From contig JAAOMT010000134.1 in NCBI GenBank assembly GCA_016748015.1, positions 1,729,057 to 1,793,056 on the forward strand: a stretch of 64,000 nt of DNA, in the 5' to 3' direction. The first letter of the stretch is position 1; each line of letters begins with the position of its first letter. A program made the position numbers and the translations under genes. The notes under the pieces are model-generated. The model did not search any database and was not told the DNA's origin. It saw nothing but the letters and a program-made list of their open reading frames with translations. Origin of the DNA: Geosiphon pyriformis uo1 (taxonomy: Eukaryota; Fungi; Glomeromycota). Of the stretch, positions 22,431 through 64,000 are shown in pieces.

Positions 22431-25400
22431 AAATAAACATACTAGTTAATATTGCAGAAAAGAAATCAATTAATAAAAAAAAATTTATTTTTACTAGTTA
22501 ATCAATTTTCATTTTACCATATAACTAGTATATGTTAGTAATAGAAAGAAAAATAAGGGATCAGCCCCAAATTTTTGAAGCAGAACCAACTATTTGTGAA
22601 TTAAGAAAGATTAGAATTATCAATCTTTATATACTAGTTAAGAACTGTAAACACATCAAAATTTTTATTTACAATACAACTAAAAATACCATTAAAATAC
22701 CAAGTAGTATTATTATTAGATATTTAAACACCAAAGCTGAAGATCAACTACCAAACATTATTGCAGATTTTCTATAACTGTGTAAATATGTAAATATTAT
22801 ATTACAAGCAATATATAGATAAAAAGAATGTTATTTGTTCTAACCAGAAAAATTAGACCAAATGAACTTGAAAAATTTAGACTCATTTAACATATGCAAT
22901 TAAAAATATTACTCAACAATTTCACTAATATTTTTGCCAGTGAAAACAAATTTGGCCAAACTGATATTATTTAGCATTAGATCAAAACTAGAGATGCTAT
23001 ACCAATTAAACAACAAACATACAGAGTACTATCAGCAAGCCATAAGATCATCTGACAAGAAATTAACAGAATGTTGAATAATAAGTTAATTCAATTATCA
23101 ATAAGTCTATAGTTATTATCAATAGTACTAGTCTAGAAAAAAAATAGAAAAATCTGCTTTTGTGTGAATTACAGAAAGCTTAACAGTATTACTTATAAAG
23201 ACAGCTATTTAACTCCATAAATTCAAGAACTATTTGATGCTTTTGAAGAGAAAAAATAGTTTTCAACATTGGATCTAAACAGTAATTATTGACAAGTAAC
23301 TATAAATTCAGCCAACAAAAAAAAGACAACATTCACAACTAAAAAAAAGAACTTTAAATTTGATGTTATGTCTTTCAACTTAATAAATGCTCTAGCTATC
23401 TTTCAATGGCTTATAGAAATTGTCTATACTAATTTACTATGAAAATTAGTAGTAGTCTACTTGGATAACACCAATGTGTTCTTAAAAACATTTGATGATT
23501 ATTTTTACTATTTTCAGCAAGTATTTGAAAGACTAAAAAGAGCCAAATTAAAATTGAATACAACTAAATGTTTTTTTGAAAAAACGAGCTCAAGTTTTTG
23601 GAACATGTTATAAACAAAGATAGTATAAAGACAAATCCAAACAAAATTGAGATTGTTAAAAACTTTCTAGTACCAACAAATCTCACAAAATTAAGAGCAT
23701 TCTTGGAATTTGCTGAATATTATTGCTGCTTTATCCAAAATTTTTTCAAGCTGGCTCAACTACTTTACCAGTTCTAAGCAAAGAATGTGAAATATGAATG
23801 AACTGAATTCCAACAAGAAGCTTTTAACATTCTAAAAAGAAAGCTTATTTAAGCACCAGTACTAATCTATTTAGATTATAGCAAACTATTTATTATTATT
23901 ATCAATGTATTTGGTCAAGCCATAAAAGCAGTACTGTTACAAAAAAAACTAGATAGAAAAGAACACTCAGTAGCATACACCAGCCAAAATTTAAGCCCAG
24001 CTGAGAAAAACTATAGTACTCTAACATTAAAACATTTGGCTATTTATTGGGTTGTTATCAAATGAAAATAATATTTGAGTCAAAAGTTTTATGTATACAC
24101 TGATTACAAAAAATTAACATTAATTTAAAAGCAAAAATTTGAAAATAATCACCTTACAAGATAGAAAATAGAGCTATTATTATTTAATTATACTGTATAT
24201 TATAAAAAGAGAAAAAAAATAGAAATGCTAATAGTTTGTTATAAATAAAACAAATTTAAGAACATTTTAACCCAAAAATATTACAAAAAATAAACACACA
24301 AAAATATTAACAACTTTAATATTATATTAATACTCAACAGTTCAGGAAAAATTATCTCAAAAAAAACAAAACAATATAAAACAACAATCAAAATATTTTA
24401 TCACTTATCAAGATATTTTATACTGAAAAAACAAAAAATATTTAGATCAATCACTTAGAGTTATTACAAAACTAAAAAAAAAACAATATTAATTAACATG
24501 TATTCAGACCCAACAACAGAACATTTTCATAAAAAAGCAATCATAGAAAGAACCAAAAAAAGATATTATTGTCTATCTATATATTCAAATATTATTTAAT
24601 ATGTTCAAAATTGTGATGCTTGTTAAAAAAAGGAGGAACAAAACTCAGTAAACTGCTAAAACCAATTAAAATAAAACAACTATTTGATCAAATTAGAATT
24701 GACTTAGTTAGACTATTACTAATAATCAGCAGAGACAATCATTATATAGCAGTAGTCATAAACTATTTTACAAAATGGTCAGAAGCAAAAGCAATTCAAA
24801 AAGCAGATGCAAAATCTATAGCTGAATTTGTTTACCAAGATTTGATTTGTTGACATGGATGTTCAAAAAAATTATTATCAGATTAAAAAACTCATTTTGT
24901 GAACAGAACATTAGTAAAATTAAGTCAAAGATTTGGAATTAAAAGACTATTATTATTATTATATTATTTACAAACAAATGGCTTAGTTGAAAAATTCAAC
25001 AGAACAATATGTGAAGCAATAGCAAAAATCAGCCAAAAAAACCAAAACAAATGGAATTTATTTATATTATCAATACTATTTGCTTATCAAACAATAAAGC
25101 AAAATATCACACAAGCAACACTATTTGAACTTGTTTATAATAGAACAACAACATTACCAGTTAAGATAGATATCAACACATATCCAATAAAACCAATAAC
25201 AGAAACCAACTTCTAAAGAACATTGTTAAAAAGAACATACAAACTAATAGAAACATTGAAAAACAAAAGATGAAAAACAGCTAATAATATTTAAAAGGCA
25301 CAAAAAAAACAAAAAAAATGACATGATAACCAATTATTAGATAAACCAGTTGAATTCAAGATTAGAAACAAAGTATTTTTATATTGTACCAAAGTAAAAA

Positions 25401-25990
25401 AACAATAAAATAAAAAATTTGATTCCAAATAAAACAGATCATTTCACATTAAGGAAATTCTAGAAAATAAAACTTATAAACTAAGATAGAACAACAAAAT
25501 TTTAGCTAAAGCAGTACATAAAAATTGACTGAAATTATACTACAATATAATATCATTATCTACTAATAATATTATACAACTGAGAATACAAAAAATACTA
25601 ATCAAACTAAATAAAATTTATGAAATCTTAAACCAATCATCATTATTGAAGCAAACACATTGAATTAACTTACTAATAGAATATATAAAGAGTTAAAAAC
25701 ACATAACAAAAACAACAAAAAAAGATAGAAATCTTTAACAATATTGATTTACTGGCACAACAATTATTACAACTAATTCAATAATAATAATAAGAGCATT
25801 ATGTTTAAACATACACATAATACAGATGCAAAATTTGAACTTGGATATTTTGGACAGACCACTATAGTTAAAAACTTCAGTTATGTATAAAATTAGATTA
25901 AAAAATAGCAATAAAAATTACAGCAACTTATTAATACAAAAGAAAAATTTAGAAGATTTTACAGAAGCTCAATATTAAAGAAGAGAATAA

Positions 25991-54666: not shown

Positions 54667-57600
54667 TATTATTTATAGAAATTTAGGAATTTTTAATAAA
54701 GATATAAAGTAGTTAATTAAAAATAGGTGCAATAAAAAAAAATTTCAGAATTCTTAAGAAATCACAGGATTTCAGGAATTTTAGATTTTAAAAATTCCAA
54801 AATTCTTGGTTAAAAGAATTAAAAAAATCCAAGAAATCTCATATAATCTTAAATATATATATATAATAAAAGTATTAAAAACAGAAAAAGAGAGTTTAGA
54901 ATTAATATCAACAATTAATTAATTATCTAATATATTTTCTTTTAAAAAGTAGTTTTCTACAACTTAAAGTAAAATCAAATTACATATTAATAAAATATTA
55001 ATTATCTTCTGAATCTATGTTATTATCACTTAATTAAAAAATATTAATCATTTTTATTCTATCAACATAAAATATTAATAGAACTTAACATTTAACTATA
55101 CTAAACCAATAACTCTTGATTATGACTATTAATAGAATACTAATTTCTTATTTTTTTTCTTATTTTCTTTTATTTTCTTTATTTTTTTTGTTTTATTTTT
55201 TGTTATTTACTAATTGATTAAAAAAATTAAATGCTGACTATTTAATATCAAAAATAGCTTGATAAAAAACTTAGAAATAAGAGTAGAAATTTAAGAATAG
55301 CTTATTAGAAGAACATGACTGTTAGAATAAACCAGCTACTACACTAAAAAAAAATTCATAAAATAAGCTTCTGGAAGAGTATTGAAATAATCATTGAATC
55401 TTTGTTTATTATATAAAAGACTTAATCAAAACCTTCAAATTACAAAAACCTTCAGATTTACTAACATTACCAAGCTATTGAGCATTAAGTTATGAGTTTG
55501 TTATTTGTATTAATATTCCAAATAATCACTTGTAATATTTAGTACTCCCTATAAAGTATAATCTAACAAAAAACTAGCATCAATATTAATTATCTGGAAA
55601 AGTGACAAACCAAAAAATTATAAGAGAAAACCACTTAAAATTTACAAAATTCTTATTTTAATATTATCAAAGTTACTTGAAATTAACAAGTAACAATTGG
55701 TTAGCAAAATCAGTTTTCAATTATTATATTAACAAAAAAATTAAATTCTATTTGGAAGACCAAAGAAATTTAGAAACTGCTCTTAACAATTTCTACAGTA
55801 AATTATTTTAAAGCACTACATTTTTACTAAACCATTTATTTACACCAATAATCACAAAAATAAAAAGAAAAATTAGAAATTACATCTAAAAAAAATTTTC
55901 TATTATCTTTGCAAACAAAAAAAAATTACAAACACTAGCAAAAATTCTAAAAAAATACAACTGCTTAATTGAAAGAAACCAAAAGTTATTTTATCTATTC
56001 ACTTATTATACTATTATATACTAAGAAATATTATTCACATATTATTAAAATTTGCATTACTATTAACCACAAAAACACTATTATCCAGAATACCATTCTA
56101 AAATAATCAGAAGAAAGCCAAATTATTATGAACTTATAGTAAATACTATAAAGAATTTAGATCATGATCAACAATTTTATTAGAACTTTAATTACTACTA
56201 TCACAACCAAATTTCAGATCTATCAGTTATTGGAAAGTTACCAATTCAAAAGAAAAAATAAACAGTAATTAGTAAAACAATAATCAAAACCCAATCCCAA
56301 ATAATCCAAAAATACAAATTCCAATTGTTTCAACTCAGTAAAACTTGAACAATCCAAATTTTACTTCTATTATTTAGTAAGACTTACTTTTAGTTATCAT
56401 GATCAATTCACCAGTTGCATTAATTATATCATCACAACAATAGTCTCTACAACCACCATCACAATAATAACAATTAGCACCAATAACATATACATCTATT
56501 GACAAACTGAAAAAATTTACTAGTAAAGAAAACAATATCTAAACATGTTTAAACAATATCACTAAGGCAGTTACAACCAATAATTAAGACAATGTCAGAG
56601 CCTTTTAAGCCATTTTTTACTTTTTGTAAAATACTGTCAACTCATAATATTAGAATATTGTCAACAAACCACAAACCTTTGATGTATTTAAAACCACATT
56701 TCTATAATATTTTAGCAATTACAACAGCATTAATAGATTATTAACTAGTTTTACTATACTTAAACAAAATAAAATTAAAGCAGTTACTACTTATTTAGAA
56801 TACTTCTACAGAAATCTGTACCAAATACAGGCAATACAAGCTGATTACTTTATTAAGACACAAATCTTAAGCCAGTTTATTAGTAGACTATATAGTAGCT
56901 TGTTATAACAAGTATATCTAGTACATCCAAATATGTTCCAAAATACAGTCATATATGCAAAAGATTTTAAATCAGCCAAATTTAAAGCTAATCATACTTA
57001 AGCCATTAATCTAGTGATAAATAGATCATCTAAATTGGATATCAATTTGGCAAAGTTATTAATCAGAAAATTGAAAGATACTTAGCTAACAATCAGACAA
57101 TTTATTAATTTTCACAACACTGCAACAATACAAAAAACTTCAATTATTTTTAAAATTAATTGCATCTATTATTCTCATCAACCAACCAATCATAGCAGCA
57201 AGAAATGTGTATCTGTCATTATTGTGATAAACAAAAACACCTAAAATTGGACTACCATATAATATTAAATAACTAATAATTGTGAAATTAATATTAAAAC
57301 TTTAATTACCAGTTTTAAATTCCAAATTACATTCAAAATTAGAAACTATATCAATCTTATTACATCTTAATAATGCAACAACTAATATACTTACCTCCAG
57401 TATATCAAACTCCAGTACTAGTCATCTATTAATTACAGCCACAAATTATCTATTAACTTCAACTAATTTAAACACCACTTTAAAATCTAGTTCAAATATT
57501 ATCTGATAGCTAAAAACCAAAGATTATACACACATCACAGAATTGGAAATCAGTAATAGTAATACACCAACCAATTCTCAATTTACCAAATCAGCCATTA

Positions 57601-60600
57601 GAATTATGCCAGCAAAGTTTGGAAAATAGATAGACCCAAAACCTGAATTCCTAAAACTATTTAAGTTTTCTGGTTACTCCAGAAGACAATACATCCAACA
57701 ATTTGAAAACCAACCAATAAACACTTATCAACAACATTCCATCAACAACTATTACAGAAAACAAATTATTTGTAACCATATTTTTTTTCAAATTAAAAAC
57801 CCAATCAGAAACATTATTATTCAATAGAGCTGTTCTTAACACCAAACCAATTATTATCATATATACTGACACTAAAATTAATAGCCACTCTATCAAGCTA
57901 ATTCTTAATAATGATTTAATAAACAGCATTATCACATGACAATTCATAAACCAATTAGATTGCCAAGTTGATTGTACTGTTAATGCCAGAATAATTATAG
58001 TAATAGAATAACAAAAACTTCTATTGACAAAATTAACTTTTTATTTGAAGTTAATAGTATTATGACATTCATCAAGGTTTTTATGATAGAAGTTACACAG
58101 TACCAAGCACTAGTTGGTAATGACTGGCTATTTAAAACCAATATCATACTTAACTAGAACACCTAAAAGTTGCAGCTTAGTTAAAATGGTTTACAAACTT
58201 GAGTATTTGCTACTTGTGGCTATTTTAAACCAACTATTATGTATTTACTAATAGAATTTAAGAAAGAAAAAAAAACCTATCTGAAAAGCTTATCAAGTTT
58301 TATGGGCCAATAAAAATCACAATAAATTACCACTAATCTTAATCTGGAAAGAAAAGAGAAAAAAAAAGGAAAGAAAAAAAGAACAACTTCAAGTTACTAT
58401 CTTAATATATACTCTTTATAACACTACACAACTAAGACAACCAAATTATTGTCAACCCAAACTAATATGTGTTAATTATGATAAAAAATTGTTAACAATA
58501 GGTACATGTTGTGGTAACAATAAGGAATAACCAATAACAATCAAGTATTATTGCTGTTCATGCATCTTTAAATGCTTTAAACAATCCAAATAACAAGAAA
58601 AATAGGACAATGAGTCTTGTCTTACATGTAGAACAATTTTTCTTAACAAAAGAATATGAAACAACATTCCTGAACAAAAAAAAACTTGTGATAAATTGTG
58701 TTAATATACAATTCTAATCAATAATTAGATACAAAGAGAGATTTTGATTAATGAAACTTAAAAATAAGTGCTAAAATAATTGGAAGTTTATTTATATAAT
58801 AACAAAATCTGGAGAATAGTAAATACTAAAGCTAAAAGCACTTTATTCAATAAAATACTGGAAATTAAAAATAATTCACTAATGCTTCCTAAACCCAAAT
58901 TTGTTTTAACTTTCGACTTTATTAACAACATTATAGACAATACTAAACAATTTTATAAGCACTAACAAGACCTAATACCAACTTATAAAGAGCAAAAGTA
59001 AAGACTAGAACAATTAAACATAAGACTATACAAACATTGTCTAATTTTCAGTGACTTCAAATATTGTGATAATTGTGACTTTATTTACAATTTATTATTA
59101 TACATAATCTATTTAATCTTTAAAAAAAAAAAACCAATCAGCGAATGTGCATTAAAATTGAAATCAAAAATCAAGTACAATTCAGACTCCTACAATAATG
59201 GCAACAATAATTCTAACTCCATTCACTATGGCAATAATAATGATGATTTAAATTTTGACTACAATTTTGAACAATATATCACACTTTCAGATCTGTTAAT
59301 AGAGCAGAAACTAAAATAATTTAGTAATAATGATGAAAGTATTATGTTAGAATATATATATAATATTAATACAAAATTTAATTTTAAATATTCAAAAAAA
59401 CTGCTTTTAGATTAAAATCTTATTTATGCACTAGTATAAATCTGAAAATAATACTGAAAATTCTAGCAACAATAATAATCCAACTAGTTTTTAGATCTAG
59501 TTTAGTGAAAAAAAAGGATTAACATCAGAGAAAAATAATTAATACAGAATATATAGAAAATATTATTACAATGCTACAAAACAACTCAGAAAAGAGATAT
59601 ACTATAGAATTAAATAAAAAAATAGCACAGGCAATATTTCTGTTTTTGGTTAAAATAGTTTAGTTAGTTTTAGTGAGAACAAAAAAAAAATTAAGGATTA
59701 CAGCAAAAAAAATTAAGAAATTCGGATCAACAAATAGAATAAATATATCAGTTAATATGATAGAAAAAAAACAGTTTATAAAGAAAAAATTATCTCCATT
59801 CATTAATTAATTTCTATTTTATTATATGACCAGTATATAATAATTATAAAAAGAAAAAAAAGACCAATTCCAAATTTTTGAAGTAAAAACAAATATTTGT
59901 AAATCAGAAAAGATTGCCATTACCAATTTCTATATACCTGCTAAAAACAACAAACACATCAAGATTCTAATATACAATTTAATTAGAAACCTAATTAAAA
60001 TATTAAGTGAAATTATCATTGAATACTTAAGTACTGAAGTTGAGAATTAAGCACTTACTACTATTTCAAACTTTTTACAGCTTTGTAGATATGTAGACAT
60101 TACATTACAACAATTTATAAACAAGAAGACTGTTATTTGTTATAATCAGAACAGTTAAAGCAAATAAACTTGGAAAACTTAAACTCATATTAATATATGT
60201 AACTCAAAATGCTACTCAACAATTTTATTAACATCTTTGTGAATAAAAATAAATTTGGCAGAACTAATATTATTCAATATTAGATCAAAACTAAAAATGT
60301 TATGCCAATTAAACAACAAGTATACTGAGTACTATTAACTAGTTATAAAATTATCTGACAAAAAATTAACAGAATGTTAAACAATAAGTTAATTCAACTA
60401 TCAATAAGTTCATGGTTATTACCAGTAATATTAGTTCAGAAAAAAAATGCAAAAATCCACTTTTATATTGATTATAGAAAATTTAACAGTATTACTTGTG
60501 GAGATAGTTATTTAATTCCACAGATCCAAGAACTATTTAATGCTTTTGGAGAAAAGAAATGGTTTTTAATACTAGACTTAAATAGTAGTTACTAACAAGT

Positions 60601-63448
60601 AGTCATGAAATCAGCTAACAAAAAAAAGACTGCATTTATAACCAAAAAAAAAAACTTTGAATTTAATGTTATATTATTCAACTTAACCAATACTTCAGCC
60701 ATTTTTCAACAACTTATAGAAATTGTCTATACTAGATTACTATAAAAATCAATAGTAGTGTATTTAAATAACACTAATGTGTTTTTAAAAACATTTAACA
60801 ACCATTTTTACCATTTTTAACAAGTGTTTAAAAGACTAAAAAGAGCTAAATTAAAGTTGAATACAACTAAATGCTTTTTTGGAAAAACAAAACTCAAGTT
60901 TTTGGAACATATTGTAAGCAAAAACGGCATAAAAACAGATCCAAACAAGATTAAAATAGTCAAAAACTTTTTAGTACCAACAAATTTTACAAAATTAAGA
61001 GCATTCTTGGAATTTGCTAAATACTATTATCACTTTATTCAAAACTTCTCCAAACTAGCTCAACTACTCTACCAGTTCCAAGCAAAAAATGTCAAATATA
61101 AATAAATGGAAAACCAACAAAAAGCTTATTTAAGCACCAGTACTAATCTATCCAAATTACAGCAAGCCATTTATTATTATCATGAATATATCAAGTCAAG
61201 CATTAAAAGTTGTATTGTTTTAAAAAAGATTAAATTGTTGAGAATATCCAGTAGTATATGTCAACAAAAGTTTAAGTTTAGCTAAAAAGAACTATAGAAC
61301 TTCAGCATTAGAACATTTGGCTATTTATTAGACTGTTATTAAATAGAAAAAATATTTAAGTCAAAAGTTTGATGTATATACTAATCACAAAGAATTAATA
61401 TCAATCCAAAAGTAAAAATTTAGAAACAATTATTATGTAAGATGAAAAATAGATCTATTACTATTTAATTATACAGTACATTATAAAAAAATAAAACAAA
61501 ACAAAAATGCTAACAATTTGTCACAAATAAAACAAATCTAAAAAAACATTTCAATCCAAAAATATAACAAAAAATAAATCCACAAAAATATTAACAATTT
61601 CAATATTATATTAATATTCAACAGTTTGAAAAGAAATTATCTCAAAAAAAACAAAATAACATAAAACAACAAGCAAAATATTTTATCACTTACCAAAATA
61701 GATTATATCAGAAAACAGAAAATACTCAGATTAGCTATTTAGAGTAATTACAGAACCAGAAAAAGAAACAATATTATTCAATATATATTTAAATCTAATA
61801 ACAAGACACTTTTATAAAAAAGCAATCATATATAGAACCAGAAAAAAATATTATTGGCCATCTATATATTCAGATATTATTTAATATGTTTAAAATTGCA
61901 ATGTTTATCAGAAAAGAGGAAGAATAAAACTCAATAAACTGTTAAAATCAATTAAAATAGAACAATTATTTGATTAAATTGGAATTGACTTGATTAGATC
62001 ATTAATAATAATTAACAAAGATAATAAATATATAGTAATAGTCATAGACTATCTCACAAAATAGCCAGAAGCAAAAACAATTCAAAGAGCAGATGCAAAT
62101 TAGTAGCTGAATTTGTTTATTAAAATTTGATATGTCAAAATGGATATCTAAAAAAATTATTATCAGATTAAAGAATTCACTTTGTGAACAGAATATTAAC
62201 AGAACTAAGTCAAAAATTTAGAATTAAGAAACTATTATTATTATCATATTATTTACAAATAAATGACTTAGTTAAAAGATTCAACAGAATATTGTATAAA
62301 ACAATAGCCAAGATCAGCCAAAAAAACCAGGACAAATAAAATTTGTTTATATTATTAGTATTATTTGCTTATCAAACAATAAAGTAAGATACCATATAAG
62401 CAACACTATTTGAACTTGTTTATAGTAAAATCACAATATTACTAATTAAGATAAATATTAATATATATCTAATAAAACTAATAATAGAAGTCAATTTACA
62501 AAAAAAATTGCTAAGAAAAACATATAACTTAATAAAAACATTAGAAAACAAAAAAATAACACAATAACTGATTACTAAATAAACCAGTTAAATTCAAGAT
62601 TGAAAACAAAGTACTTTTATATTATACTAAAGCAGAAAAACAATAAAATAGAAAATTTAACTTCAAATAAAATAAACTATTTTACATTGAAGAAATTCTA
62701 GGAAATAGAGCTTATAAATTAAGATAAAACAACAAAATTTTAATTAAAACAACACATAAAAATTGACTAAAATCATATTATAATATAATATTATCATTTA
62801 TCAGTAATATTCTACTATTGAGAATACAACAAATACTAATTCAACCAGATAAGATTCTATAAGATTTAAAATCAATTATAATTATTAACATAAACACATC
62901 AAATTGAGATAACAGAAAAATATATAAAAAACCAACACATATAACAAAAGCAAACAGAAAAATATATAAAAAACTAACACATATAACAAAAACAAACAGA
63001 AAAATAAAAATTATTGACAACATTTACTTACTTACACAACAACTGTTTCAACTAATTCAATATTAACAACTAAACATAGAAATTACAATCAATCAACAAA
63101 CTATTCAGTACAAAAACAGAAAAAAAAAGCCAAAACACCAATATAAAAGACCCAAAAAATTGAAAAACATAATAGATAATATATTAGCAAAAGTAAGATT
63201 ATTAGTAGAAACACCAAAGATATTAACACCATATAAAGAATTAATAAAAAAAAACTGAAAATGATAAACACAACAATTTTCAAGAAACTTTTACTATTAC
63301 CACTTAGGACAAAATCTCAATATTCAGAACTTGTATATTAACAACACAAAATAATTATTTGATATAACAATATTGTATTAATTCAAATAATTTGTAGAAA
63401 AAAACAACTTATTTACACAGATACAAACTATATACTAGTTATAAACAG
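54667..63448 (+). mobile_element. Ty3/Gypsy copy B with dUTPase; 5' LTR 54667-55537, no 3' LTR
   Basis: Colinear with copy A through gag, PR (~57890), the Cys-rich region, dUTPase, RT (60374-61105), RNase H and integrase. LTR termini eroded to TATTA...TAATA. Runs directly into the terminal array. Confidence 0.92.
62911..63005 (+). repeat. 42-bp tandem duplication in the post-integrase region of Gypsy B
   Basis: AACAGAAAAATATATAAAAAAC(C/T)AACACATATAACAAAA(G/A)CA twice plus a partial third unit. Confidence 0.8.
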
Positions 63449-64000
63449 TTAGAGATATTTATAGGGATATTTATAGGGATAAGGATATTTATAGGGATAT
63501 TTATAGGGATAGGGATATTTATAGGGATATTTATAGGGATATTTATAGGGATATTTATAGGGATAGGGATATTTATAGGGATATTTATAGGGATATTTAT
63601 AGGGATATTTATAGGGATATTTATAGGGATATTTATAGGGATAGGGATAGGGATAGGGATATTTATAGGGATAGGGATAGGGATAGGGTTAGGGATAGGG
63701 ATAGGGATAGGGATAGGGATAGGGATAGGGTTAGGGATAGGGATAGGGATAGGGTTAGGGATAGGGTTAGGGTTAGGGTTAGGGATAGGGATAGGGATAG
63801 GGATAGGGATAGGGATAGGGATAGGGATAGGGATAGGGATAGGGATATTTATAGGGTTAGGGATAGGGATAGGGATATTTATAGGGATATTTATAGGGAT
63901 AGGGATAGGGATAGGGATAGGGATAGGGATAGGGATAGGGATAGGGATAGGGATAGGGATAGGGATAGGGATAGGGATAGGGATAGGGATAGGGATAGGG
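63449..64000 (+). repeat. Telomeric array of non-canonical hexamers (ATAGGG dominant, ATATTT and TTAGGG variants)
   Basis: 552 nt = 92 hexamers in unbroken phase. The G-rich strand runs 5'->3' towards the window end, as expected at a right chromosome end. Confidence 0.85.

What the first reader, a model, noticed from the sequence alone, without database searches (positions are those of the whole stretch)
63449..64000. Non-canonical three-word telomere in perfect hexamer phase
Seen: 92 hexamers, by my count about 65 ATAGGG, 18 ATATTT, 7 TTAGGG, one TTAGAG and one ATAAGG. ATATTT is always followed by ATAGGG (12-mer ATATTTATAGGG), dominates proximally (63455-63670) and recurs at 63845-63892. TTAGGG is confined to 63689-63862. 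Known: TTAGGG is the ancestral fungal repeat, and variant repeats come from template changes or multiple telomerase RNAs. Inference: the telomerase template has shifted to ATAGGG, perhaps a 12-nt template with internal ATA realignment, alongside a residual TTAGGG template or paralogue. The layered order may record successive template use. A G-free hexamer inside a telomere is unusual.
Basis: partly seen in the sequence, partly recalled or inferred. Interest (0 to 1): 0.85.

Follow-up and report, generated by a model that had tools for sequence, protein, structure and literature searches.

The report
Three-word telomere of Geosiphon fungus
The window ends in a real chromosome-end telomere of the fungus Geosiphon pyriformis, built from three repeat words (TTAGGG, ATAGGG and the 12-base unit ATATTTATAGGG) that obey the same strict grammar at about 40 chromosome ends; this points to an unusual, not yet identified telomerase template rather than a sequencing error.

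Summary
Positions 63449-64000 hold 92 in-phase hexamers: 65 ATAGGG, 18 ATATTT, 7 TTAGGG, 1 TTAGAG and 1 ATAAGG. Every ATATTT is followed by ATAGGG.

- **It is a telomere.** The array ends exactly at the end of a 1.79 Mb contig of Geosiphon pyriformis, with the G strand running outward. At least 39 other contig ends carry the same three words. An intact-looking TERT gene exists.
- **It is not a basecalling artefact.** Deep, accurate short-read contigs of the same sample hold the 12-mer words.
Genome-wide, TTAGGG is not residual. It forms the outer runs at 20 of 33 ends, with ATATTT innermost and ATAGGG in between.
- **New here.** (1) At 14 of 21 junctions with unique DNA, this window included, the first unit is TTA-type and ATAGGG or ATATTTATAGGG follow (P about 2e-9). 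(2) ATATTT is never followed by ATATTT or TTAGGG (0 of 320). (3) ATAGGG and 12-mer blocks also lie outside long TTAGGG runs.
- **Reading.** These points favour templated writing of all three words. No telomerase RNA was found.

The scan had noted this telomere type before on other ends of this genome (s1-505754, s1-495486). It is a new variant of a known kind.

The parts
63449..64000 (+). Terminal telomere array: 92 hexamers in one phase, G-rich strand running to the contig end
63449..63454 (+). First unit, TTAGAG: a TTA-type start word (TTAGGG with one G>A) directly after unique DNA
   Evidence: The first unit is TTA-type at 14 of 21 unique-flank junctions, against 10.8% among units 2-15.
63455..63670 (+). 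Proximal zone rich in the 12-mer ATATTTATAGGG: 15 of the 18 ATATTT, mixed with single ATAGGG and one ATAAGG
   Evidence: Short-read contigs of run X1 cover 63457-63624.
63671..63844 (+). Middle zone of ATAGGG with 6 of the 7 interspersed TTAGGG, including TTAGGG x3 at 63767-63784
63845..63892 (+). Second, distal cluster of 12-mers (ATATTT at 63845, 63875, 63887) around the last TTAGGG at 63857
63893..64000 (+). Terminal run of 18 ATAGGG at the contig tip. The assembled tip is probably not the natural end.
   Evidence: Junk tails at other contig tips.
60012..62970 (.). Subtelomeric copy of a dispersed repeat. It also occurs at 22709-25731 of the window (78.5% over 3 kb) and beside other ends. 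A-rich and G-poor on the + strand, with no Pfam domain.
   Evidence: Very high summed short-read depth at 62491-62742.
62911..63006 (+). 42-bp tandem repeat, 2.3 copies, in the subtelomere

Best explanation
Shown:
- This is the right-hand telomere of a 1.79 Mb Geosiphon pyriformis contig.
- The species' telomeres are composite. They consist of in-phase hexamer words TTAGGG (T), ATAGGG (a) and ATATTT (t).
- t exists only as the first half of the 12-mer ATATTTATAGGG.
- The usual order from inside to outside is: G>A-decayed a-type units, a 12-mer-rich zone, a runs, then T runs.

Inferred:
- All three words are written by telomerase, not produced by decay of a TTAGGG tract.
- The enzyme pairs chromosome ends with a canonical (CCCUAA-like) alignment part of its RNA. 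A start on non-telomeric DNA therefore gives one T.
- It then copies a variant part that gives ATA followed either by GGG (a) or by TTTATAGGG (t then a, a 12-nt path taken at most once per cycle).
- Long T runs need either a second, canonical template (a second telomerase RNA gene or allele, plausible in a multinucleate fungus) or a second register of one longer template.
- T runs act as the usual outer cap.
- Slippage and exchange between ends then reshuffle blocks.
- This window's end is one instance: start word TTAGAG, a 12-mer zone, an a zone sprinkled with T, a second 12-mer burst, and an a run at a probably truncated tip.
For: **Identity**
- An ORF of the window is 100% identical to G. 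pyriformis G9A89_018743 on a contig of the same length.

**Telomere**
- The array is terminal and points outward.
- The same words sit at contig ends, always pointing outward.
- A TERT gene with RBD, TERT_C and RT motifs A and C lies at C572.

**Real sequence**
- Run X1 (same sample; short contigs at depth of about 100) matches the junction and holds the 12-mer array words at very high summed depth.

**Grammar**
- t is followed by a or a G>A-decayed a in 317 of 320 cases; the other 3 run into a phase break. It is never followed by t or T (P about 3e-54).

**Start word**
- The first unit is TTA-type at 14 of 21 unique-flank junctions, against 10.8% for units 2-15 (binomial P 1.7e-9).

**The a and t-a words are not only fossils**
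- Pure a runs start on non-telomeric DNA. Examples are the C44 tip on a truncated retroelement and C336, C530 and C578 after a single T.
- a blocks of 3-23 units and t-a blocks lie outside T runs of 12-40 units (C581, C530, C635, C778, C731:46619-47116, C646).
- ATATTT has no trail of point-mutation intermediates, whereas G>A variants abound.

**Precedents**
- Human telomerase itself makes position-1 variants, including ATAGGG (PMC3919612).
- One Paramecium telomerase RNA gives two repeats (PMC13085455).
- Two telomerase RNA paralogues are reported in Zostera.
Against: - No telomerase RNA was found. Rfam Telomerase-vert gave no match in the genome.
- Exact 15-18 nt templates for the 12-mer occur outside arrays only in one dispersed repeat family.
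- CCCTATCCCTAA occurs outside arrays only in a coding exon and on a GC-rich, probably foreign contig.
- Templates of 8-11 nt cannot be searched with the tools at hand.
- The inside-to-outside order (t before a at 29 of 30 ends, a before T at 29 of 32) and the G>A decay gradient also fit old, static inner layers.
- Tandem block duplications (C732, about 290 bp) and stacked arrays (C646) show that recombination shapes these tracts.
- Ends were found with patterns that contain a or t, and long TTAGGG tracts are partly withheld as N. Pure-TTAGGG ends would therefore have been missed.
- Contig tips are probably truncated.
- The read evidence is contigs from the same sample, not raw reads.
Confidence: 0.5

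Rival explanations
1. Telomerase makes only TTAGGG. ATAGGG and the 12-mer are proximal telomere variant repeats, or a telomere-derived subtelomeric satellite. They arose once, spread to all ends, and are reshuffled by slippage, unequal exchange and break-induced copying between ends. This would resemble human proximal variant repeats or ALT-type telomeres.
For: - T runs are outermost at 20 of 33 ends, and t and decayed units are innermost.
- The G>A decay gradient suggests old inner layers.
- Block duplications and stacked arrays exist.
- The relative Rhizophagus has plain TTAGGG (PMC10234402).
- No variant template was found.
Against: - It does not explain why a single TTA-type unit is followed at once by a or t-a at 14 of 21 unique junctions.
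- It does not explain pure a runs seeded on non-telomeric DNA.
- It does not explain short a blocks inside distal T runs.
- It does not explain the absolute ban on t-t and t-T.
- ATATTT differs from ATAGGG at three bases, with no intermediates.
Confidence: 0.25
2. The telomerase template changed over time, and each layer records the template then in use, with a residual TTAGGG template or paralogue beside a now dominant ATAGGG template.
For: - Consistent layering across ends.
- Arrays that start with T-t-a and arrays that start with T-a-a could date from different 'eras'.
- a outnumbers T in assembled arrays, 1366 to 926.
Against: - The outermost, least decayed layer is TTAGGG, so the latest template would be the ancestral one.
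- This window and several other ends have t-a and a blocks outside T runs.
- Telomere turnover should erase historical layers in the distal part.
Confidence: 0.15
3. A sequencing or assembly artefact: miscalled TTAGGG repeats in long reads.
For: Contig tips carry short non-telomeric tails (TTAGA, AGATG, AGGAGA, ATATGTAT) that look like read-end or adapter remains. The library types are not on record.
Against: - Short, deep (about 100x) contigs of run X1 match the junction and hold the 12-mer words.
- The phase is perfect, the grammar is strict and the layering is non-random at about 40 ends in both contig orientations.
- The known nanopore telomere miscalls are other words (from memory: TTAAAA, CTTCTT, CCCTGG).
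Confidence: 0.03

Closest known systems
Human telomere variant repeats: proximal TVR zone plus telomerase-made position-1 variants (PMC3919612)
   Same: A variant-rich inner zone and a canonical TTAGGG outer zone, with end-specific interspersion maps. ATAGGG is a position-1 variant, a class that human telomerase is reported to generate. GTAGGG and CTAGGG also occur here in distal T runs.
   Different: Here the variant is the majority word. It forms pure runs of up to 33 units, seeds on unique DNA and recurs outside T runs. A 12-nt unit with a G-free half has no human counterpart.
Paramecium TTGGGG/TTTGGG telomeres from one telomerase RNA (McCormick-Graham and Romero, cited in PMC13085455)
   Same: Two hexamers that differ at one position coexist in one tract, and one enzyme can write both.
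   Different: In Paramecium the mixing is by misincorporation, and I recall no long runs. Here there are long homogeneous blocks, strict alternation in places (T-a-T-a at C9, C93, C399) and a start-word rule.
Aspergillus oryzae dodecanucleotide telomere (Kusumoto 2003, listed in PMC9498494; the sequence TTAGGGTCAACA is from memory)
   Same: A 12-nt telomeric unit made of a TAGGG-type half and a G-free half.
   Different: From memory, the A. oryzae 12-mer is its regular telomeric unit. Here it is optional, mostly proximal, and mixed with two hexamers.
Plants with mixed or switched repeats: Genlisea intermingled TTCAGG/TTTCAGG; Zostera with two telomerase RNA paralogues (bioRxiv 10.1101/2020.03.11.987156)
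   Same: More than one repeat within a species. Template-border changes or RNA paralogues are the proposed cause.
   Different: Different words. No layered order or grammar is mentioned in the passages I read. For Geosiphon the RNA is unknown.
Rhizophagus irregularis (Glomeromycotina) telomeres, TTAGGGn (PMC10234402)
   Same: Same subphylum, and TTAGGG is present at ends.
   Different: Rhizophagus is reported as plain TTAGGG. Its telomeric reads were extracted with a (TTAGGG)8 filter, so variants could have been missed there.
Recombination-maintained telomeres (human ALT, PMC3518223; Kluyveromyces lactis 'roll and spread', from memory)
   Same: Variant repeats throughout the tract, repeated block patterns and stacked arrays.
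   Different: An intact TERT gene is present. The start-word rule and the t-a grammar are not expected from recombination alone.

Membership tests
Telomerase-maintained eukaryotic telomere | Terminal position with the G-rich strand running 5'->3' to the end | tested here: met
   The window end is the contig end, and the G strand is on +. The physical chromosome end itself cannot be tested.
Telomerase-maintained eukaryotic telomere | The same short repeats at many chromosome ends, always pointing outward | tested here: met
   At least 39 further contig-end arrays. Internal arrays lie next to scaffold gaps or withheld elements and still point to the near end.
Telomerase-maintained eukaryotic telomere | A telomerase reverse transcriptase gene is present | tested here: met
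   C572: Telomerase_RBD and TERT_C hits, with RT motifs A and C readable. A second copy at C608 is a pseudogene.
Telomerase-maintained eukaryotic telomere | A telomerase RNA whose template is complementary to the repeats | tested here: inconclusive
   No Rfam Telomerase-vert match. No exact 15-18 nt template outside arrays. Leads near TSR2 and MPK1 are coding exons or 7-8-mers at chance level.
Telomerase-maintained eukaryotic telomere | Bal31 sensitivity, a 3' overhang and telomerase activity | not testable with these tools
   Needs bench work.
Proximal telomere variant repeat zone (human type) | Variants confined to the inner part, with a pure canonical outer part | tested here: not met
   It holds only as a tendency: t before a at 29 of 30 ends, a before T at 29 of 32. 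The tip is a-type at 13 of 33 ends, this window included, and a and t-a blocks lie outside long T runs. Tip truncation weakens this test.
Proximal telomere variant repeat zone (human type) | Variants are point-mutation derivatives of the canonical unit | tested here: inconclusive
   ATAGGG differs from TTAGGG by one base. ATATTT differs from ATAGGG by three, with no intermediates.
Uniform long-unit fungal telomere (A. oryzae type) | One long unit repeated uniformly to the tip at all ends | tested here: not met
   12-mers are interspersed with hexamers, mostly proximal, and never form the whole tract.
Nanopore telomere basecalling artefact | Variant words absent from accurate reads of the same DNA | tested here: not met
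   Deep short-read contigs of run X1 hold the junction and the 12-mer array. Pure ATAGGG runs at 63625-63688 were skipped by the tool as repeats.
Recombination-only (ALT-like) telomere maintenance | Loss of telomerase | tested here: not met
   The TERT gene looks intact. Its expression was not tested.

The most novel reading that the evidence does not exclude
One telomerase ribonucleoprotein writes a small 'language'. It has a canonical alignment segment, which gives a TTAGGG start word on any new end, and a variant copy segment with a 6-nt path and a 12-nt path. Alternatively, nuclei of this coenocytic fungus carry different telomerase RNA alleles that share one cytoplasm. Either way, natural telomere sequence would record template and register choice event by event. 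Geosiphon would then be a living intermediate in telomere-repeat evolution, with ancestral and derived repeats coexisting and capping shared between them.
Probability: 0.3. Interest if true: 0.8.

Novelty: new variant of a known kind. Interest (0 to 1): 0.6.

Why it matters
How telomere repeats can change without uncapping chromosomes is an open question. It is discussed for yeasts as 'runaway' co-evolution of repeats and binding proteins (PMC12449055).

Geosiphon offers a natural case where the ancestral TTAGGG, a one-base variant and a 12-nt unit coexist in phase at every examined end. The rules are simple and can be tested: a start word, a forbidden-successor rule and a preferred order. Finding its telomerase RNA(s) would show whether one template with two registers or several RNAs write the words. 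Its Myb-type telomere binders could be tested on the three words.

It also matters practically. Telomere finders that look only for TTAGGG will under-call chromosome ends in this lineage.

Tried and rejected
1. **Composite 18-nt template (T-t-a).** The exact string occurs 18 times, always inside terminal arrays.
2. **15-mer GGGATATTTATAGGG with non-array flanks.** It gives only array variants and a dispersed repeat family (C64, C572:1093516, C783; 75-86% alike over more than 1.8 kb). I take these as chance carriers, not RNA genes.
3. **12-mer TTAGGGATAGGG with a non-G base before it.** Outside arrays it occurs only in a coding exon (C656) and on contig C73. C73 has 41-58% GC, unlike this genome, and no Rfam hit.
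4. **AACCCTATCC, 1 kb from TSR2 in both copies of a duplicated segment.** It looked like a neat hybrid template, but it lies in the last coding exon of a CCA-adding-enzyme-like gene on the other strand. Four such 9-mers in 37 kb is what chance gives. Rejected.
The only 8-mer there (CTAACCCT) is in an MPK1 coding exon, and the intergenic part holds only 7-mers. The other earlier candidate (s1-495479) could not be located.
6. **Rfam Telomerase-vert over the genome.** Nothing.
7. **JGI metagenome contigs with the 12-mer dimer.** Two unrelated bacterial-looking contigs with just two copies, and no array.
8. **Longest shared strings between ends, as a test for recent copying.** Uninformative, because long pure runs dominate.
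9. **Pfam on ORFs of the last 25 kb of the window.** Nothing.

The Geosiphon genome paper is not held, so the sequencing platform remains unknown to me.

Full report
**Observation.**
The sequence at 63449-64000 is exactly as described. It holds 92 hexamers in one unbroken phase: 65 ATAGGG (a), 18 ATATTT (t), 7 TTAGGG (T), one TTAGAG (first unit) and one ATAAGG. In unit order it reads: ? t a t a ? t a t a a t a t a t a t a a t a t a t a t a t a t a a a a t a a a a T a a a a a a T a a a T a T T T a x10 t a T a a t a t a x18.

- Every t is followed by a.
- Fifteen of the 18 t lie in the first 37 units (P 4.5e-5).
- T is confined to 63689-63862.
- TRF finds the array.
- There is no other copy of these words in the window.

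**What it is.**
The window is G000:C710:1729057-1793056, and the contig is 1793056 bases long. The array is therefore terminal, with its G strand running outward. An ORF of the window is 100% identical to Geosiphon pyriformis G9A89_018743, on a contig of that same length. The assembly size fits the published one: 128 Mb in 792 contigs here, against 129 Mb and 795 scaffolds (PMC9453076).

The same words occur at many contig ends. They are on the minus strand at contig starts and on the plus strand at contig ends. I fetched and tokenised 33 ends and six more.

A TERT gene with Telomerase_RBD and TERT_C domains and readable RT motifs lies on C572. A second copy on C608 is a pseudogene. It has many in-frame stops, and its motif A region is deleted.

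**Is it an artefact?**
Its Logan contigs are short, with per-contig depth of about 80-150, which indicates deep accurate short reads. Laid on 62449-63688:

- X1 matches the unique subtelomere without differences.
- It covers the junction bin 63415-63456.
- It holds the 12-mer zone 63457-63624 at very high summed depth.

The tool skipped the pure ATAGGG stretch after 63624 as a repeat. I chose the laid stretch to stop before the first TTAGGG. Some stretches of the genome next to TTAGGG runs read N (withheld), and I left them alone.

A second run from another organism or sample (X2, 2025) has 39-49 nt contigs of the pure 12-mer. This is a lead only. A scan of JGI metagenome contigs found no 12-mer array.

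**Genome-wide anatomy.**
In 33 ends there are 1366 a, 926 T, 320 t and 208 other units. The other units are mostly G>A variants of a (ATAGAG 53, ATAGGA 49, ATAAGG 32).

- t is followed by a (276), by a decayed a (41) or by a phase break (3). It is never followed by t or T (P about 3e-54).
- t lies inside a at 29 of 30 ends, and a lies inside T at 29 of 32.
- The last eight units are mostly T at 20 ends and mostly a at 13.

The earlier scan note that 'all 41 ends' have inner ATAGGG and outer TTAGGG (s1-495486) therefore describes a strong tendency, not a rule. Blocks of a lie outside long T runs (C581, C530, C372, C681, C635, C778). Blocks of t-a do the same (C731:46619-47116, C646, C778, and this window at 63845-63892). 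Strict T-a alternation occurs at C9, C93 and C399.

Contig tips often carry a few non-telomeric letters (TTAGA, AGATG, AGGAGA, and ATATGTAT at two tips). The assembled tips are therefore probably read ends, and the arrays are lower bounds.

**A new regularity.**
At 21 junctions where the array abuts non-repetitive DNA, the first unit is TTA-type (TTAGGG, TTAGAG or TTAGGA) in 14. Among units 2-15 the TTA-type share is 10.8% (29 of 268; binomial P 1.7e-9). After that single T come a runs (C336, C530, C578, C514) or t-a (C28, C42, C499, C775 and this window). Three of the exceptions have TTTGGG- or GTGGG-like flank ends. One tip array (C44) is 24 a units added directly onto a truncated retroelement that encodes a dUTPase-like frame.

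**Mechanism.**
In telomerase, the 3' part of the template only aligns the DNA end and the 5' part is copied each cycle. This is established knowledge, from memory. The aligning part is itself copied only when a primer pairs at its far 3' edge, as in new telomere formation.

A template with a canonical aligning part and a variant copied part therefore predicts what is seen: one T, then a, a, a. The ban on t-t and t-T fits a fixed 12-nt path (ATA-TTTATA-GGG) that can be bypassed through the repeated ATA. It does not fit free stuttering, which would sometimes repeat. Long T runs then need a second canonical template or a second register.

I could not find the RNA.

- Rfam Telomerase-vert gave nothing.
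- Exact long templates exist only inside arrays, or by chance in a repeat family, a coding exon and a GC-rich contig.
- Two attractive motifs turned out to be coding exons.
- Templates of 8-11 nt cannot be searched here, because arrays and chance hits swamp them and all 12 own-genome searches are used.

**Rivals.**
1. A T-only telomerase with inner variant repeats spread by recombination fits several things. These are the layering, the G>A decay gradient, the roughly 290-bp block duplications in C732 and the stacked arrays in C646. It does not explain the start-word rule, a runs seeded on unique DNA, or short a blocks within distal T runs.
2. A historical succession of templates fits the layers. 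But it puts the ancestral word last and is contradicted by the interleaving.
3. An artefact is unlikely.

My odds are:

| Reading | Odds |
|---|---|
| Real telomere | about 0.95 |
| Telomerase writes a as well as T | about 0.65 |
| Telomerase writes the 12-mer | about 0.45 |
| The combined model as stated | 0.5 |

**Limits.**
- Ends were found with patterns that contain a or t, so pure-T ends would be missed.
- Tips are truncated.
- The read evidence is contigs of the same sample.
- The genome paper is not held.

**Comparison with known systems.**
- The relative Rhizophagus is reported as TTAGGGn (PMC10234402).
- No paper in the library links ATAGGG to a fungal telomere.
- ATAGGG is known as a position-1 variant that rises with human telomerase activity (PMC3919612).
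- Paramecium writes two hexamers from one RNA.
- Genlisea mixes two variants, and Zostera has two RNA paralogues.
- A. oryzae has a 12-mer telomere (reference in PMC9498494).
- Yarrowia Tay1 recognises TT-AGGG as its core (PMC12449055). This makes the T to A change at position 1 relevant for capping.

**Verdict.**
This is a new variant of a known kind, with interest 0.6. The scan had already noted this telomere type on other ends of this genome.

Noticed in passing
G000:C608:~677700-680900 (L068), minus strand: A second TERT copy that is a pseudogene. It is 60-85% identical to the C572 gene exon by exon, has many in-frame stops, and lacks the motif A aspartate region.
   Followed up: partly
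G000:C44:1-5500 (L040); C646:1-1700 (L061); C629:163850-166500 (L084): 'Stacked' ends: a full array (decayed units, t-a zone, a run, start of a T run), then a withheld stretch of 0.3-4 kb and/or unique DNA, then a second array further out. At C44 the outer (ATAGGG)24 sits directly on a truncated retroelement with a dUTPase-like frame. This looks like elements inserted into telomeres and then re-capped.
   Followed up: partly
G000:C732:71-1372 (L090), minus strand: A block of about 290 bp of mixed t, a and variant units (with ATAGTG and AAAGGG markers) is repeated in tandem about three times inside the proximal zone. This is evidence for unequal exchange or slippage of large blocks.
   Followed up: no
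all tokenised ends; window 55000-63448: Strong G>A bias on the G strand in inner telomere units (ATAGAG, ATAGGA, ATAAGG, on to ATAGAA and ATAAAA in the flanks). The subtelomere + strand is A-rich and G-poor (A 0.52, G 0.07 at 63000-63448). Many 'unique' flanks of other ends are decayed hexamer arrays.
   Followed up: partly
G000:C64:4284, C572:1093516, C783:485143 and 494960 (L074-L076): A dispersed repeat family (75-86% alike over more than 1.8 kb, no long ORF in the part read) that carries the exact 15-mer GGGATATTTATAGGG about 310 bp from one edge of the shared part. Probably chance.
   Followed up: partly
G000:C651:964929-975720 versus C489:48911-58931 (L080-L083): A duplicated segment or alternative haplotype of at least 11 kb at 93-96% identity, holding MPK1, TSR2 and a CCA-adding-enzyme-like gene. 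The C489 TSR2 copy has an in-frame TGA.
   Followed up: partly
G000:C651:968799-968880 (L080:6800-6881), minus strand: HDV-like ribozyme match just under the Rfam threshold (RF02682, 41.4 bits against 44, E 1.8e-5). It lies at the edge of a GC-rich intergenic stretch (up to about 50% GC) between MPK1 and TSR2.
   Followed up: no
G000:C73:1-7889 (L094): A 7.9 kb contig with 41-58% GC throughout, unlike this genome (about 29%). No Rfam hit. Possibly foreign DNA in the assembly.
   Followed up: partly
contig tips: C468, C581 (ATATGTAT); C42, C334, C778 (AGA); C578 (AGATG); C565, C391 (AGGAGA): Short non-telomeric tails at many contig tips, some resembling the start of a transposase mosaic-end adapter (from memory). 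They suggest the assembled tips are library read ends, not natural ends.
   Followed up: partly
window 60012-62970 and 22709-25731: The subtelomere is a copy of a dispersed element that is also present further inside the window (78.5% over 3 kb) and near ends C530, C514, C775, C336 and C499. At C530, the one end where I compared orientation, it faces the other way relative to the telomere.
   Followed up: partly
run X2: A 2025 run labelled as another organism holds short contigs of the pure ATATTTATAGGG array but not the unique flank. Either another sample containing a Geosiphon relative, or an unrelated satellite.
   Followed up: no
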